DNA of 64,000 nucleotides from Haliotis rubra (GCF_003918875.1 NW_025765346.1:62001-126000); one strand, 5' to 3'. Positions 25,632 to 63,436 are shown, counted from the first letter of the stretch. Translations and numbers: made by a program. The notes: generated from the letters alone by a model not told the origin.

Positions 25632-28600
25632 ATGTCAGGGTCTGAATCTACTTTCATCCCCAACCACACGACACCGTTGGAGACTCCACCTTCACGACGA
25701 CGTAGTCCCAGATGTTTGTTCTACGTCGTCTTCGCCTTCTCCGTGTCTGTCAATGTGGCTTTAGCTGTGCTTTTCAGCGTACACATGCAAAACCCAGGGT
25801 CATTCCACCAGAAGAAGTCGGACGTATCTTCTGGTCAGCTTGATCATGGGGGTCATGATATGTGTTTTACTTGTGATCAGTTTGGTCCGATGGTCGAATC
25901 ACTGGACACTAACATCATTCGGACCTCCTCGCATCAGCTATGCTGTCAAAGAAGTAATACTGAGGTCAGGGAAGCATTCAAGAAGGTAGGCAGTTGTATC
26001 GAAACACGAATGTTCAGGCTTGTTTCAGAGAGAGTGTGCGAACCTGCATATGTATGTATGTATGTATGTCTGTATGTGTGTGTGTGCGTGTGTACGTACG
26101 TACGTACGTACATATCTATGTATGTGCGCACGATCATGACTGCATGCACATGCGTGTGTGTGTGTGCATGTATGTGAGTATGTATGAATGTATGTATGTG
26201 TGAGTGTGCATGCGTTCGCACGTGCATATATATGTATGTCTGTATGTGTGAGTGTGCGTGCGTGCGCACGTGCATATGTTTGTCTGTCTGTGCGCACGAT
26301 CATGACTGGATGCACATGCTTGTGTGTGTACATGTATGTGTGTATGTATGAATGTATAAATGTGTGAGTGTGCGTGAGTGCACACACGTGCATATGTATG
26401 TATGTGTGAGTGTGCTTGCATGCGCACATGCATATATCTGTCTGTCTGTCTGTACGTACGTATGTATGTACGCACGATAATGCCTGGATGTACATGCGTG
26501 TGGATGTGCATGTATGTGTGTGTGTTTGTGCGTGTGTTTGTATGCATATTCTGTTATTGAATGGCTGTGCTATATATTTCAGATGATCATTGACGAACTC
26601 AACAGACGAATTGCAGGTTTGTTAAGCTATTACATCAACACAGTTCACCGTAGTTACATGAAGCTGTTGTGACATGTGTCCAAGTATAACATGTATTCCT
26701 CAAACAGTTAACACCGTCTTGAGTTCAATACATTAATAAATTAAATATATGTTAACATATTTTGTTGATAGAGGAATACCTAACCCTCGTCACATGTTAT
26801 ATGTCATGATCTGAAACATTTAGCTTGATGTTTCATGAAAAGATTGAATTATTTACATGGATCAGTCATTAATAGACTGAAACATTTAATTCAATGTGCC
26901 ATGATTAGATGAAATCATTGAAGCATGAACCACAAATAGGTTAACAAAATTTCATCGATGTATCGTGGTTAGATTGTTTCATTTGCATCGATTATAATTC
27001 GATTGATTCAGGCAGAACCTATTAAAAGTATCATATGCACATATATGCGCCTTGATTGAGGCACTGGTCATCGTGACGTCATGCTATTGCTGCTACCGAG
27101 ATTGTATATACTCGAAAAACACAACACCGCACACTTTTTCATACGCCTGCAATCGGTCGGAGTATTGCTGCACTGAACCTTGCAAATTTTGGTGTTTAAC
27201 TGTGTTTGATTAATATATCATCTTTAAATGAAACAAATGCCTGGAGTCATCAACTGCAGATTGTTGTGTAATGTGCAATTCTATTTTCAGGGTCGGACCA
27301 GTTGAATTCCCCTGCTATGCTGAATGTCTTCTATGAAACCATTAACATTGGATCCACTGGCGCCCACCTCGACATGGTTCCAATCAAAGGTACAGCCACG
27401 CCGCGGGCCAAGAAGTATTGACACTCGATAAATCTCTCAGACCTTAATTTCGAAGCATAAATTTGAGTCCATGCATTCAAGTATGAGTGGGTGAGGTTTT
27501 ACGCCGTTTTAAGCAAAAATCCGGCACTATCACTGCGGGGGACACCAGAAATGGGCTTCATACCTTCTACTCATGTAAAGAATCGAAGCCCGATTTTCGA
27601 CGTGACAAGCGAACGCTCTAACCACTAGGCATTCCTCCTTTAATTATAAATGCAACTGTATACCACAGGCCCTCGTGTCTTTGCGAAGATTCAAGATTAA
27701 AAAAATGTTTTTGAGAATACCCCCGACTCGAAATGCACACAAATGGATGACGATATATCCGCACAAATGGGGGTGTGGTTGAAGCAAGCCTGCTGATTGG
27801 TCAACACATAAATTCACGGGATTTTTTTCTTTCATCGGCTGCTTAATGTAAGAATAATTTTCGAGCAATGGCTTCTCAAAAGAAAGCATCAGATGTAAAT
27901 GTCTATTCAACACTAACCAGAGGGCTTGCTTCGACCACACCCCCATTTTGTGCGGATATATCGTCATCCATTTGTGTCAAGATCGTTTAGTTGAGAGTCA
28001 AAATCGGGTTTCAATCGACTTGCAAAAATAACAATAAAGAATTGGTGGGTGTTATTAGTGGTGATCTATAGGCCAGTTATCCATACTATTATGTTAAATT
28101 AAGTTTAGATCGATTGCTTTCGATGGTAGCATAGTGATCGGCAAAGCAAAAGGGTAGGGTACACCGAAGTGCTCGGCCTTGTCATAATGTATTGTACTGT
28201 GAAGCATTTCGAGTCAGGGGTCATCTCAATTGTTTATATTTTTTTAACATATTTAATCCTCGCAAAGACACGAGGACCTGCGGTATATACGTGTATGTGT
28301 CGTTAGTTTGTCGGATTTGCATCAGTATGGTCAGATGACATGGACGACAACGTCTTTTGTATGCTGTTATTGTAGTGCACATATTTCTTGAATTTTTTTT
28401 ATATTTTTCACAAATTATTCTTAACAAAGGAAATCCGTATATGTAACTGACACTGTTCTTGTTCTTGTTGTGTCAGAAATAAATGCACTATAAAATTGTT
28501 ACCCATAAAGCCGCATTATAGTAGAATGTAGATTATGTTGTTACCCATAAAGTTGCATTATAGTAGAATGTAGAGGTTGTTACCCATAAAGTCGTAATAT

Positions 28601-29667
28601 AGTAGAATGTAGACGTTGTTACCCATAAAGTCGCATTCTAGTAGAATGTAGATTATATTGTTACCCATAAAGTCGCATTATAGTAGAATGTAGAAGTTGT
28701 TACCCATAAAGTCGCACTTTAGTAGAATGTAGATAATGTTTTTACCCATAAAGTCGCATTATAGTAGAATGTAGAAGTTGTTACCCATAAAGTCGCATTC
28801 TAATAGAATATAGATTATGTTGTTATCCATAAAGTCGCACTATAGTAGAATGTAGATTATGTTGTTACCCATCAAGTCGCATTCTAGTAGAATGTAGAAG
28901 TTGTTACTCATAAAGTCGCATTATAGTAGAATGTAGATCATGTTGTTACCCATAAAGTCGCATTATATTAAAATGTTGAAGTTGCAAGACTCAAAATCGC
29001 ATTATAGTGGAAGCTCTTACCCATAAAGTCGCATTATAATTGAATGTAGAATTTGTTTCCAAAACAGTCGCACTAATAGAATATACAAGTTGTTACCTAT
29101 AAAGTTGCCTGCCTTTGTTGCAGGTCACAACTCCTAAAATGCAGATAGTAGTACTGATCAAATTTAAACCCAACATACTTATCCTTCTACTATGAACATT
29201 ATTTAACGTCTGTGAAAAATACACAACCAATGTCAAAACTATCCAAAGATAGTTCTAACGTCTGGCCAAAGATAGTTCTAACGTCTTTGTATTTTCCAGG
29301 CTCGAAACCAGCATGGACCATCTACGATGACTACAGCATGTCGTATTGTGCCAATGTCGTGTGTGATAACGGAACGATCAGAGTTCCAGGCGCAGGGAGG
29401 TACCTCGTATACTCGCACATAACGCTTAACGTAACCCGAGACACTATCTTCACTCACCGGATACATCGGAACGGGGAAAACACGGTCCCGTTGCTGATAA
29501 GCAAGGTCTCAATCACAGGGACAGATTCCCCTCGGCGAACCTCGTTTCTCTCTGCCGTTTTGAAACTAAAAGAACACGATGTCATCAGCGTATATATACT
29601 GGATGAGTATTATGATCTAGTCGAAAAGAGCAGGTTTTCAAACTACCTGGGTTTATTTAGACTCTGA
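25632..29667 (+). CDS. TNF superfamily ligand 1 (type II membrane protein, 284 aa); exons 25632-25985, 26583-26616, 27291-27389, 29300-29667
   Basis: N-terminal TM helix LFYVVFAFSVSVNVALAVLF; TNF homology domain motifs TGAHL, W, GRYLVYSHITL, TSFLSAVLKL..D.ISV and NYLGLFRL; all introns GT-AG with consistent phases 0/1/1. Confidence 0.9.
26050..26545. repeat. Compound TG/TATG/TGCG microsatellite in intron 1
   Basis: Low-complexity alternating purine-pyrimidine tract. Confidence 0.85.
27737..27977. mobile_element. Foldback element or MITE in intron 3 of TNF ligand 1
   Basis: About 54-bp near-perfect inverted arms (27737-27790, 27923-27977) ACACAAATGGATGACGATATATCCGCACAAA..GGGGGTGTGGTYGAAGCAAGCC. 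Confidence 0.75.
28495..29105. repeat. 39/42-bp minisatellite, about 15 copies, intronic
   Basis: GTTGTTACCCATAAAGTCGCATTATAGTAGAATGTAGA with largely alternating A / TTAT spacers. Confidence 0.9.
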
Positions 29668-29745
29668 GGTTGGGTGAAAAGTGGTTTAACGCCACGTTCA
29701 AGATTACACTGTAAGAGTGCGTCTCTCTCTCTCTCTCCCACCCTC

Positions 29746-29839
<94 letters not shown>

Positions 29840-29840
29840 A

Positions 29841-61917: not shown

Positions 61918-62239
61918 TATATAGGGGAGTACGTTGACTCACACAGGAAATCGTAATACCATGAGTAAGTTCACACTCAATGTGTCAGCACGGTTTAACG
62001 TTCAGATCACTTCCTGGTGTGAAAACATGCATGTATTTTCGAGCTTCTCATGTGAAATATTTAAATACTTAAATACTTAAACCAGTGTGAAACCGGCATA
62101 TTGTGTGTAGCACAACAGATGTCTATTCCATTATTCAGATTAAAAATCGCTGTGTCCATCTTGCTTGACTACGAGGAAAGACCGTTACACAGTGAGTATT
62201 ATGCGGCTATTTTGATCATCATTTTTGGTTTCATCGAGT

Positions 62240-62388
62240 TACGTTTTACGCTTTTAGCAATATTCCAGCAATATCACGGCGGGGGACACCAGAATTTGGC
62301 TTCACTCATTGTACCCATGTGGGGAATCGAACCCGGGTCTTCAGCGTGACGAGCGGACGCTTTAACCACCAGGCTACTTCACCGCCCC
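62240..62388 (-). mobile_element. tRNA-derived SINE family A
   Basis: Reverse complement of the family A consensus. Confidence 0.85.
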
Positions 62389-63049
62389 TGGTGACACCTA
62401 AAATGTTTCCAATTTTCGATTTCGAATTCAAGTAGAAAAGTTTCTTATGCAGTGAACTACGTTTGTAACGAACACGCTTGTTGCGAAATGATGGGTATAA
62501 AGAACTGTTTTGGCTCCGGTCACTTGCTGCATATCTTAACGCAAATACGTATAACGAACTACGTAGAAGAGAATAAATTTTAATATGCCAAATTCGAAAC
62601 GAACAAAATAGAAATGCGAAGATTATCTGAAAAGAGGGAGAGAGCGAGCCATTGGTATGTCGATATTGGGAGTGTTAGAGATCCACATTGGAAGGACCTT
62701 CTGCTGTTCCAAAAACACGGTGTGTTCCCTTTTTCAGTGTTACCGTTTGACAGGCAGAGCACGTGACAGGCCCTGAATAGGAATAGGAAGACGGCGAGTG
62801 GCCACCCACACCCACAACCGTACCATACACGGTATCCGGAGATCAAAGGGTTTCACAGAATCTACACATTCGGAAATTCAAACCCGTATGTTTAGCTTAA
62901 CTGGAGAACGCTGTCACCACTAGACTACCCGTTAAAACCATTGTGCCTGAGATGGAGACGTCCTTGACCCGGCAAAAATATAGCTGTATCTTCCCTGTTG
63001 GATCTAGTAGCAGGAAATACATACAGCAACAGTGACCACGATCTCAGTG

Positions 63050-63436
63050 ATGGCGGACACTTCAGACGACAGTTACCTGACAGTGGAACATCTCCAACCA
63101 CAGAGAGAAACACCGCCGATTCCAAGGAGCTTCTGTTCTGCCAAACGGGTCATCTTTACGACTGTTCTTGTTCTGTCGTTATCTGCCAATGCGGCTTTTC
63201 TATTCTATTTGTACCGTCACCACTTCAAGGACGCCACCAGAGACGATCAGCCAGTGCAGGTGTCACAATCGGAAGTTCATGGAAGCACGTTCTGCACGGA
63301 CTGCACGGACATTGGAGTACATCCGGGCATGCGAAACATTTCTGACCTTGAGGATCTATTGGTGCAAATCACTCCCAACTCGTCTTATCTGTGCTGTCTG
63401 AAGAATGTCCAGGGTCGACAGATGCTCCTGGATCTC
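63050..63436 (+). CDS. Exon 1 of TNF superfamily ligand 4 (gene continues beyond the window)
   Basis: TM helix VIFTTVLVLSLSANAAFLFYLY, CTDCTDIGVHP...LCCLKN and phase-0 donor gtaagt at the same position as ligand 3; the TNF domain itself is not in the window. Confidence 0.8.

What the first reader, a model, noticed from the sequence alone, without database searches (positions are those of the whole stretch)
25632..63436. Tandem array of at least four divergent TNF-superfamily ligand genes in two subfamilies
Seen: four co-oriented genes, hidden across introns in the ORF track. Each begins with a short cytosolic tail, TM helix and Cys stalk in exon 1, ending at a phase-0 donor; three have a complete C-terminal TNF homology domain in the window. 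Copies 1 and 2 share CFTCDQxGP..CCQR and an extra CANVVC pair in the TNF domain. Copies 3 and 4 share CTDCxxxGVxP..LCCLxN, and the copy 3 TNF domain has no Cys. Start-to-start spacing is 7.6 kb, 8.2 kb and, after subtracting the 13.1-kb L1 nest, about 8.4 kb. Known: molluscs have lineage-specific TNF expansions. Inference: a diversifying cytokine locus whose members may bind different receptors or form heterotrimers.
Basis: partly seen in the sequence, partly recalled or inferred. Interest (0 to 1): 0.8.

Follow-up and report, generated by a model that had tools for sequence, protein, structure and literature searches.

The report
Four tandem abalone TNF-ligand genes
This stretch of the blacklip abalone genome holds four neighbouring, intact genes for TNF-type signalling proteins; such gene expansions are already known in molluscs, so the locus is real but ordinary, apart from a conserved four-cysteine stalk that has not been described.

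Summary
The window is Haliotis rubra scaffold C456. It carries four co-oriented TNF-superfamily ligand genes. Three of them are exact matches to RefSeq "uncharacterized protein" models.

- **Domain evidence:** all four TNF-domain exons pass Pfam PF00229. The copy 3 model has a TNF jelly-roll (pLDDT 93-98) that matches FasL, TL1A, LIGHT and TNF, and it is predicted to form a homotrimer.
- **Gene structure:** The genes have 3 or 4 exons, and the "GAHL" A-strand sits in a middle exon.
- **Copy 2:** spliced RNA contigs join its four exons. They carry one extra G after 35602, where the assembly has a frameshift.
- **Copy 4:** it finishes 3.65 kb past the window end.
- **Assembly gaps:** both are intergenic. 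H. asinina keeps the order copy 3, copy 4, serpin. H. rufescens keeps the order copy 1, 2, 3.
- **Family context:** the array belongs to a clade shared with a cluster of at least 12 genes on scaffold C2077. The genome has at least 43 TNF-domain matches.
- **Selection:** pairwise dN/dS is 0.28-0.45, so positive selection is not shown.

The motif also occurs in a nemertean homologue. It has no Pfam family and no fold match.

The parts
25632..25985 (+). Copy 1 exon 1: cytosolic tail, TM helix (residues 32-50), CFTC...CC stalk. Ends at a phase-0 donor.
   Evidence: The spliced model equals RefSeq LOC124268964 (P0006, 284 aa) exactly.
26583..26616 (+). Copy 1 exon 2: a 34-nt mini-exon that goes from phase 0 to phase 1.
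27291..27389 (+). Copy 1 exon 3: linker and the 'TGAHL' A-strand of the TNF domain.
29300..29667 (+). Copy 1 exon 4: rest of the TNF homology domain, with the CANVVC pair, and the stop codon.
   Evidence: PF00229 at 30.3 bits and 28.2 bits for the full protein. 45-47% of its sampled words are held in RNA-like runs of the study whose runs X1-X4 gave spliced copy-2 contigs; one of them (X4) is the same run.
33269..33658 (+). Copy 2 exon 1 coding part. RNA contigs start at 33077, so the 5' UTR is contiguous with it.
35130..35163 (+). Copy 2 exon 2: a 34-nt mini-exon.
   Evidence: GT..AG joints 33658|35130 and 35163|35585 in RNA contigs of 4 runs.
35585..35676 (+). Copy 2 exon 3: linker and 'TGAHL'. 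The assembly lacks one G after 35602 that all four RNA runs carry. As assembled, the frame breaks.
   Evidence: table 4 (a G put in behind 35602, in every contig); 301-aa open frame only with one extra base there.
36733..37121 (+). Copy 2 exon 4: TNF homology domain with CANVVC, and the stop codon. The 3' UTR runs to at least 37174.
   Evidence: PF00229 at 50 bits. Joint 35676|36733 in 2 runs.
41516..41947 (+). Copy 3 exon 1: tail, TM helix (residues 50-68), CTDC...CC stalk.
   Evidence: The model equals RefSeq LOC124268957 (P0001, 314 aa) exactly.
42855..42972 (+). Copy 3 exon 2: linker and the 'TGAHLYVDSE' A-strand.
43817..44211 (+). Copy 3 exon 3: TNF homology domain without Cys, and the stop codon.
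   Evidence: PF00229 at 53.5 bits. AF2 pLDDT 93-98. Foldseek TM-score by target 0.8-0.88 to FasL, TL1A, LIGHT and TNF.
45388..45546 (.). Assembly gap 1. It is intergenic, 1.2 kb downstream of the copy 3 stop codon.
   Evidence: Its flanks are collinear with the H. asinina intergenic region, in the same order and orientation. No letters were filled in.
48607..53998 (+). Non-LTR retrotransposon: coiled-coil ORF1, endonuclease and reverse transcriptase. It lies in a stretch of about 14.9 kb (about 47.0-61.9 kb) that has no H. asinina counterpart.
   Evidence: Pfam Exo_endo_phos and RVT_1. Collinearity break.
54557..54706 (.). Assembly gap 2. It is intergenic and lies inside the retrotransposon-rich insert.
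   Evidence: Collinearity with H. asinina resumes at 61930.
60624..61001 (+). zf-RVT domain ORF: the 3' part of a LINE ORF2. Whether it belongs to the same element as 48607-53998 or to a second one was not settled.
   Evidence: Pfam PF13966 at 43.5 bits.
63050..63436 (+). Copy 4 exon 1: tail, TM helix (residues 34-52), CTDC...CC stalk. Exons 2 and 3 lie beyond the window at window-equivalent 65880-65991 and 67258-67652.
   Evidence: The model equals RefSeq LOC124268961 (P0012, 297 aa) exactly. PF00229 at 50.3 bits.

Best explanation
The locus is a real tandem array of four intact, co-oriented TNF-superfamily ligand genes of Haliotis rubra. Each gene encodes a type II membrane protein of 284-314 residues. 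The parts, in order, are a short cytosolic tail, one TM helix, an extracellular stalk with four invariant cysteines (CxxC...CC) followed by a helix, a variable linker, and a C-terminal TNF homology domain.

Shown: the gene structures (3 or 4 exons), the domain identity and the fold, the splicing of copy 2, and conservation of the genes and their order in other abalone species.

Inferred from what is established for the TNF superfamily: the domain assembles into trimers on the cell surface or after shedding. The trimers engage cysteine-rich TNF receptors on haemocytes or other cells, switching on NF-kB, MAPK or apoptosis pathways in immunity and stress responses.

The array arose by old tandem duplications. 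It is one piece of a larger abalone clade of this ligand type, shared with scaffold C2077. Its members evolve fast but under net purifying selection.
For: - **Domain:** PF00229 is above cut-off in all four genes.
- **Annotation:** three of my spliced models equal RefSeq proteins exactly.
- **Splice sites:** all are canonical GT/AG with consistent phases.
- **Transcripts:** RNA contigs from four runs join the four exons of copy 2 at GT..AG joints. Words of the copy 1 last exon are held in RNA-like runs of the same study.
- **Topology:** each protein has one hydrophobic TM segment after a hydrophilic N-terminus.
- **Fold:** the AF2 model of copy 3 has TNF-domain pLDDT of 93-98. Foldseek top matches are FasL, TL1A, LIGHT, TNF-alpha and LT-alpha, with E about 1e-10 and TM-score by target of 0.8-0.88. 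PDB sequence hits to LT-alpha, TL1A and FasL have E 1e-4 to 1e-3.
- **Trimer:** the homotrimer prediction scored 0.92 against 0.00 for the best of 3 controls. Runs agree in at least 94% of contacts and partner pLDDT is at least 87. The mark was reached by 21 of 30 solved homomers and 0 of 23 single chains in calibration.
- **Orthologues and gene order:** copies 1-2-3 then a serpin in H. rufescens. Copies 3-4 then a serpin in H. asinina. The exon structure is the same in H. rufescens.
- **Selection:** pairwise dN/dS is 0.28-0.45.
- **Phylogeny:** the tree places the four genes in a 95/95-supported clade together with the C2077 genes.
Against: - No binding, signalling or expression-under-challenge data exist for these genes.
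- The trimer pass may come from the model's memory of solved TNF trimers.
- Copy 2 is frameshifted in the assembly at 35602. Only RNA contigs, from other individuals (about 2% different), show the intact frame. The reference individual could therefore carry a null allele.
- Direct splice evidence was obtained for copy 2 only. Copies 1, 3 and 4 rest on RefSeq models, orthologues and open frames.
- Membrane orientation was inferred from hydropathy and flanking charge, not tested with a dedicated predictor.
Confidence: 0.9

Rival explanations
1. One or more copies are pseudogenes or decaying duplicates. Copy 2 is the main candidate because it is frameshifted in the assembly. On this reading the locus is a partly dead array.
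For: The assembly lacks one base after 35602, which breaks the copy 2 reading frame there. No RefSeq protein for copy 2 came up in the word searches. Copy 1 has the weakest Pfam score, 28-30 bits.
Against: All four RNA runs carry the extra G and give a 301-aa open frame with correct GT..AG splicing. The break is in a run of G in a Nanopore-based assembly (PMC6774278). H. rufescens has an intact 308-aa orthologue next to the copy 3 orthologue. Copies 1, 3 and 4 are open and dN/dS is below 0.5. Copy 1 has a 60%-identical full-length orthologue in H. rufescens.
Confidence: 0.07
2. The domains are C1q-like or another jelly-roll family rather than true TNF ligands, so the TNF label is a superficial family-level resemblance.
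For: C1q and TNF share a fold, and molluscs have very many C1q-domain genes (PMC10672478). Sequence identity to vertebrate TNF ligands is only 20-28%.
Against: Pfam's best and only significant family is PF00229 TNF, and C1q did not appear at E up to 1. The top 50 Foldseek matches listed are entries holding TNF-superfamily ligands. The architecture is type II membrane with no signal peptide or collagen stalk. Relatives are named TNFSF6-, 14- or 15-like or THD proteins by their sources.
Confidence: 0.02
3. The four-gene adjacency is partly a scaffolding artefact. On this reading copy 4 does not really follow copy 3, because two assembly gaps lie between them.
For: Two N gaps separate copy 3 from copy 4. 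In H. rufescens the copy 4 orthologue lies about 290 kb from the copy 3 orthologue, in the opposite orientation.
Against: The chromosome-level H. asinina assembly has the copy 3 orthologue, then 8.9 kb later the copy 4 orthologue, then a serpin. This is the same order as here. Non-coding matches are collinear on both sides of gap 1 and on both sides of the insert that holds gap 2.
Confidence: 0.05

Closest known systems
Vertebrate TNF-superfamily ligands (TNF-alpha/LT-alpha, TL1A/TNFSF15, FasL/TNFSF6, LIGHT/TNFSF14)
   Same: They share the type II membrane topology, a C-terminal TNF homology domain encoded mostly by the last exon, the jelly-roll fold (TM-score by target 0.8-0.88) and a predicted trimer. 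The human TNF/LTA/LTB genes are also arranged in tandem (my own knowledge).
   Different: Identity is only 20-28% and there is no one-to-one orthology: LT-alpha, TL1A and FasL score alike. The stalk carries an invariant CxxC...CC module. I know of no such module in vertebrate ligands and Pfam does not model one. Receptors and function are unknown.
Described molluscan TNF ligands (AbTNF-alpha of Haliotis discus discus, CgTNF-1/2, ChTNF, PmTNF) and the known molluscan TNFSF expansion
   Same: They belong to the same phylum and have the same TM + THD architecture. Lineage-specific expansion is already reported, with up to 27 paralogues in one mollusc (bioRxiv 10.1101/2024.07.27.603686). The described members are induced by bacteria or LPS (PMC12367993 introduction).
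   Different: These four genes are annotated only as 'uncharacterized protein' in RefSeq. Their sequence relation to AbTNF-alpha was not tested here. H. rubra shows at least 43 TNF-domain matches, more than the reported maximum, although some are fragments. The papers read here (PMC12367993 and the bioRxiv preprint) do not mention a stalk motif in the ligand; the literature search for it was judged from titles and abstracts only.
The TNFSF cluster on H. rubra scaffold C2077 (LOC124282364, -65, -67, -69 and others)
   Same: It forms one 95/95-supported clade with this array. Five C2077 genes carry the same stalk module. The nearest relative of copy 2 is a C2077 gene (66% identity in the TNF exon), not copy 1 (52%).
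   Different: It lies on a different scaffold and is a much larger array, with at least 12 TNF-domain exons between 409 and 588 kb. In H. asinina, orthologues of both groups lie on one 83-Mb chromosome.

Membership tests
TNF superfamily ligands (TNFSF) | TNF homology domain matching Pfam PF00229 above the gathering score | tested here: met
   Copies 1-4 score 28-30, 50, 51-54 and 50 bits against a cut-off of 23. The genome scan gives independent hits at the same four places.
TNF superfamily ligands (TNFSF) | Type II membrane topology: no signal peptide, one N-proximal TM helix, C-terminal ectodomain | tested here: met
   There is one 19-residue hydrophobic window (Kyte-Doolittle mean 2.1-2.4) at residues 32-68, after a hydrophilic and Arg/Lys-rich N-terminus. 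AF2 models a single long helix at 45-78 in copy 3. Orientation is inferred, not measured.
TNF superfamily ligands (TNFSF) | Ten-strand jelly-roll fold like solved TNF ligands | tested here: met
   AF2 pLDDT is 93-98 over residues 170-314. Foldseek against PDB lists entries holding TNF ligands throughout its top 50, with E about 1e-10 and TM-score by target of 0.8-0.88.
TNF superfamily ligands (TNFSF) | Assembly into a trimer through the inner-sheet interface | tested here: inconclusive
   Three copies of the copy 3 TNF domain scored 0.92 against a best control of 0.00, with at least 94% of contacts shared between runs and partner pLDDT of at least 87. In calibration 21 of 30 solved homomers and 0 of 23 single chains reached the mark. 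This is a prediction only and may reflect memory of solved TNF trimers.
TNF superfamily ligands (TNFSF) | Binding to cysteine-rich-domain TNF receptors and downstream signalling | not testable with these tools
   No receptor was sought or modelled.
A specific vertebrate orthologue (TNFSF15/TL1A, TNFSF6/FasL or TNFSF14/LIGHT), as some RefSeq names of relatives suggest | A clearly best, reciprocal match to one vertebrate member | tested here: not met
   LT-alpha (1e-4), TL1A (7e-4) and FasL (7e-4) score alike by sequence and by fold. The '-like' names given to relatives differ between close paralogues.
C1q domain family | Match to the Pfam C1q family; signal peptide; often a collagen stalk | tested here: not met
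   No C1q hit at E up to 1. There is a TM anchor instead of a signal peptide.
Tandem gene array | Adjacent, co-oriented paralogues with no unrelated gene between them | tested here: met
   All four are on the + strand at 25.6, 33.3, 41.5 and 63.0 kb. Only repeats and a LINE lie between them. The order is conserved in H. rufescens (1-2-3) and H. asinina (3-4).
   Exo_endo_phos, RVT_1 and zf-RVT were found. ORF1 gives only weak coiled-coil-type hits and no L1 ORF1 family. It is a non-LTR retrotransposon. Its clade and its nesting were not resolved.

The most novel reading that the evidence does not exclude
The four-cysteine stalk (C-x2-C, 19-34 residues, C-C, then an amphipathic helix) may be an undescribed, ancient extracellular module that defines a lophotrochozoan subfamily of TNF ligands.

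Evidence that it is conserved:
- It is invariant in 39 aligned relatives from abalones, a deep-sea snail, oysters, pearl oyster, unionid mussels and clams.
- A regex finds it in 60 of 63 full-length sequences, including scallop homologues and one from the nemertean Tubulanus.
- It is as conserved as the core Trp of the TNF domain.

Evidence that it is undescribed: it has no Pfam family and no structural match.

It might staple the trimer by disulfides or bind a metal, or it might control shedding. Either would be a mode of ligand assembly not known in vertebrate TNF ligands. Separately, H. rubra may hold the largest TNF-ligand repertoire yet counted, with at least 43 domain matches.
Probability: 0.35. 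Interest if true: 0.55.

Novelty: new member of a known kind. Interest (0 to 1): 0.32.

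Why it matters
Abalone are farmed and fished, and they suffer from bacterial and herpesvirus disease. TNF ligands are central switches of invertebrate immunity and cell death. A correct map of this array helps anyone studying abalone immune gene expression or resistance loci. That map includes the exon structures, the assembly frameshift in copy 2, the fourth gene that runs off the window, and the link to the larger C2077 cluster.

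In evolutionary terms the locus adds a well-resolved case of old tandem duplication, with gene order partly conserved across Haliotis species. The conserved cysteine stalk gives a concrete and cheap biochemical question about how these ligands assemble. Beyond that, the finding fits what is already known about molluscan TNF expansions.

Tried and rejected
Rejected because the donor is phase 0 and the acceptor phase 1, and because RefSeq models and RNA contigs show middle exons.
- **Exact look-ups of P0001 and P0002** in the contig collection found nothing. Records of this genome seem to be withheld there.
- **Two hits in the big search, P0030 and P0058,** looked like repeated stalk modules. 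They are an Ig-repeat protein and a TPR-like repeat protein, so they are spurious.
- **Fold searches with the stalk alone.** The model had pLDDT 70.9. The best PDB Z was 2.8, which is noise. The only sensible ESM Atlas row was a molluscan THD-protein cluster. No known fold can be assigned, and with a model of this quality that does not show a new fold.
- **Whole-gene positive selection.** It was not seen: omega is 0.28-0.45. Site models were not run because there were too few orthologues with DNA in hand.
- **Heterotrimer support from interface conservation.** The result is 70% vs 53% identity, p = 0.055. This is too weak, and it is confounded by general core conservation.
- **Haplotig duplication as the source of the copies.** Rejected because the copies are only 27-46% identical.
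- **Literature.** No paper in the held library describes this locus or a ligand stalk motif. Subscription papers are not covered.

Full report
**Identity of the sequence**

Word searches with the exon-1 ORFs returned RefSeq proteins of Haliotis rubra that sit on a 193,262-base contig. This is the length of the window's scaffold, G000:C456. The genome has 1.378 Gb in 2855 contigs. That agrees with the Nanopore/Illumina blacklip abalone assembly (PMC6774278, found).

**Checking the observation**

The four exon-1 ORFs are present on the + strand, and each ends at a phase-0 GT donor. The last-exon ORFs of copies 1-3 hit Pfam TNF (PF00229) at 30.3, 50.0 and 53.5 bits, against a cut-off of 23.

A six-frame scan of the whole genome with PF00229 found four matches on this scaffold. 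Three are the ones in the window. The fourth is at window-equivalent 67266-67640, 3.3 kb beyond the window end.

**Gene models**

The last-exon acceptors are phase 1, so exon 1 cannot be spliced straight to the TNF exon.

- **Copy 1.** Mapping RefSeq protein P0006 back to the window gave four exons: 25632-25985, 26583-26616, 27291-27389 and 29300-29667. My spliced translation equals P0006 exactly.
- **Copy 3.** Mapping P0001 gave three exons: 41516-41947, 42855-42972 and 43817-44211. The translation equals P0001 exactly.
- **Copy 4.** It was completed from the scaffold beyond the window. Its exons are 63050-63436, 65880-65991 and 67258-67652. The model equals RefSeq LOC124268961 (P0012) exactly.

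All splice sites are GT/AG. In every gene the small penultimate exon carries the linker and the conserved 'GAHL' A-strand. The TNF domain therefore spans two exons.

**Copy 2 and RNA evidence**

No RefSeq protein for copy 2 surfaced in the word searches. Contigs of four runs of one study were laid on 32200-38199. These runs have about 30-50 Mb of contigs each, and I take them for RNA because they carry GT..AG joints.

They show the joints 33658|35130, 35163|35585 and 35676|36733. One 1151-nt contig runs from 33077 through all four exons to 37174. Every contig also has one extra G after 35602.

As assembled, the frame breaks at that point. With one unknown base placed there, the four exons give a 301-residue open frame with TM, stalk, GAHL and TNF domain. 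The site is a run of G in a Nanopore-based assembly, so an assembly error is the likeliest cause. A null allele in the sequenced animal is not excluded.

For copy 1, 45-47% of the sampled words of its last exon are held in RNA-like runs of the same study, one of them (X4) a run that gave spliced copy-2 contigs. That is about what a roughly 2% divergent full copy would give. It is indirect evidence.

**The gaps**

Both N runs (45388-45546 and 54557-54706) lie between the copy 3 stop codon (44211) and the copy 4 start codon (63050). No exon or reading frame depends on them. I did not look up or fill in their letters.

The linkage of copy 4 to copies 1-3 does pass through both gaps, so I tested it by comparison with another species:

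- In the chromosome-level H. asinina assembly, the copy 3 orthologue is followed 8.9 kb later by the copy 4 orthologue and then by a serpin.
- Non-coding matches between the two species are collinear on both sides of gap 1.
- Collinearity stops at about 47.0 kb and resumes at about 61.9 kb.

The stretch between these points, about 14.9 kb, holds gap 2 and a non-LTR retrotransposon with endonuclease, RT and a separate zf-RVT ORF. Neither the L1 clade nor the nesting was established.

**What the proteins are**

Each protein has a hydrophilic N-terminus, one strongly hydrophobic segment and four stalk cysteines.

An AlphaFold2 model of copy 3, built on 39 relatives, gave these confidences:

| Region | pLDDT |
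|---|---|
| TNF domain | 93-98 |
| Stalk | 67-81 |
| Cytosolic tail | below 50 |

Foldseek against the PDB returned only entries holding TNF ligands among its top 50 matches: FasL, TL1A, LIGHT, TNF-alpha, LT-alpha, CD40L and TRAIL. E-values were about 1e-10 and TM-score by target 0.8-0.88. Sequence search of the PDB gave LT-alpha, TL1A and FasL at E 1e-4 to 1e-3, with none standing out. The genes are therefore members of the superfamily without a specific vertebrate orthologue.

Three copies of the copy 3 TNF domain were predicted to form a complex. The score was 0.92 against 0.00 for the best of 3 controls. The runs share at least 94% of contacts and the partner pLDDT is at least 87. In the tool's calibration, 21 of 30 solved homomers and 0 of 23 single chains reached the mark. 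The tool warns that a pass for a family with solved complexes may come from memory.

**Family context**

The genome has 43 PF00229 matches, in clusters on scaffolds C2077, C437, C50, C2358 and C256. A maximum-likelihood tree was built from 39 TNF-exon peptides: the four copies, 25 peptides from 25 of the other loci, and 10 proteins of H. rubra and three other Haliotis species. Matches shorter than 95 profile positions were left out. The tree shows:

- The four copies sit in a 95/95-supported clade with the C2077 genes.
- Copies 1 and 2 group with one C2077 gene (support 99/95). That gene, not copy 1, is the nearest relative of copy 2 (66% against 52% identity).
- Copies 3 and 4 fall in a 15-row clade (support 99/98) with three C2077 genes and with orthologues from H. 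asinina, H. rufescens and H. cracherodii.

The two subfamilies are therefore real, but neither is confined to this array.

In H. rufescens, the orthologues of copies 1, 2 and 3 lie in the same order and orientation and are followed by a serpin. The copy 4 orthologue lies about 290 kb away, reversed, among other TNF genes. H. cracherodii shows the same local arrangement around its copy 4 orthologue. The array predates the split of these species and was rearranged in at least one lineage.

**Selection**

Nei-Gojobori estimates on codon alignments:

| Comparison | omega |
|---|---|
| Copy 3, H. rubra vs H. rufescens | 0.34 |
| Copy 4, H. rubra vs H. rufescens | 0.45 |
| Copy 3 vs copy 4 | 0.33 |
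| Copy 1 vs copy 2 | 0.28 |

This indicates fast evolution under net purifying selection. It is not evidence for diversifying selection, although site-level tests were not possible.

One oddity appears between copies 3 and 4. The C-terminal half of the TNF domain has dS of 0.43, while exon 1 and the N-terminal half are saturated. This suggests past gene conversion, or very strong constraint, on the half that forms most of the predicted trimer interface.

**The stalk**

- The four cysteines are invariant in 13 Haliotis proteins.
- They are invariant in 39 relatives aligned full-length or over the stalk alone.
- A profile of the stalk finds nine places in the genome, four here and five on C2077.
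- The exhaustive search of 1.84 billion representatives with copy 3 gave only 61 hits at E up to 0.001.

Where sources give names, the carriers are Haliotis species, the snail Gigantopelta, the bivalves Sinanodonta, Potamilus, Saccostrea, Pinctada, Argopecten, Mactra and Mercenaria, and the nemertean Tubulanus polymorphus.

The stalk has no Pfam family. Modelled alone, it folds as a three-stranded sheet plus a long helix at pLDDT 70.9. It has no convincing structural match. I found no description of it in the held literature. Its role is unknown. Disulfide stapling of the trimer, metal binding and control of shedding are guesses.

Copies 1 and 2, their C2077 relative and the H. rufescens orthologue also share a C-x4-C pair early in the TNF domain.

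**Verdict**

This is a real, correctly spotted tandem array of TNF-ligand genes. It is already present in RefSeq as unnamed models, in a phylum where such expansions are known (bioRxiv 10.1101/2024.07.27.603686 reports up to 27 paralogues in one mollusc). It is a new member of a known kind, of modest interest. The conserved stalk module and the size of the abalone repertoire are the parts worth a follow-up.

Noticed in passing
window 35599-35602: The assembly has four G where RNA contigs of four runs have five. This frameshifts copy 2 and probably kept it out of the RefSeq protein set.
   Followed up: partly
window 33600-34000 and 36200-36800 (also 24955-25140, 62101-62349, 63538-63759): Copies of a short interspersed repeat, whose translation recurs as '...QQYHGGGHQ...W/MWGIE...', lie in and around the TNF genes.
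   Followed up: no
window 43817-44211 against window-equivalent 67258-67652: Copies 3 and 4 are mosaic. The C-terminal half of the TNF domain has dS of 0.43 and a nearly identical protein sequence, while the rest is saturated. This suggests past gene conversion among paralogues of this subfamily.
   Followed up: partly
L044, L045, L048 (H. rufescens JALGQA010000025.1, 3.50-3.84 Mb): H. rufescens keeps copies 1-2-3 and then a serpin. It has the copy 4 orthologue about 290 kb away on the other strand, preceded by a second copy-3-like TNF exon and followed by a 282-aa TNF gene. This points to a lineage-specific rearrangement or block duplication.
   Followed up: partly
G000:C2077:409000-588500: At least 12 TNF-domain exons lie within about 180 kb on one strand. 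This is the largest TNF-ligand array in this genome and the sister group of the window's genes.
   Followed up: partly
P0056 (Tubulanus polymorphus, Nemertea): A nemertean TNF-domain protein carries the same CxxC...CC motif, so the module seems older than molluscs.
   Followed up: partly
window 26000-26560: A long CA/TG-rich microsatellite starts right after the exon-1 donor of copy 1. It produces the long spurious ORFs seen in several frames.
   Followed up: no
window 16563-17552: A minisatellite shows up as long repetitive ORFs in several frames on the minus strand.
   Followed up: no
window 7072-8100 and 20035-22825: There is an intact-looking 342-aa ORF whose sequence suggests a Tc1/mariner-type transposase. 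A second LINE (endonuclease and RT ORFs) lies on the minus strand upstream of the array. Both are judged from the translations only.
   Followed up: no
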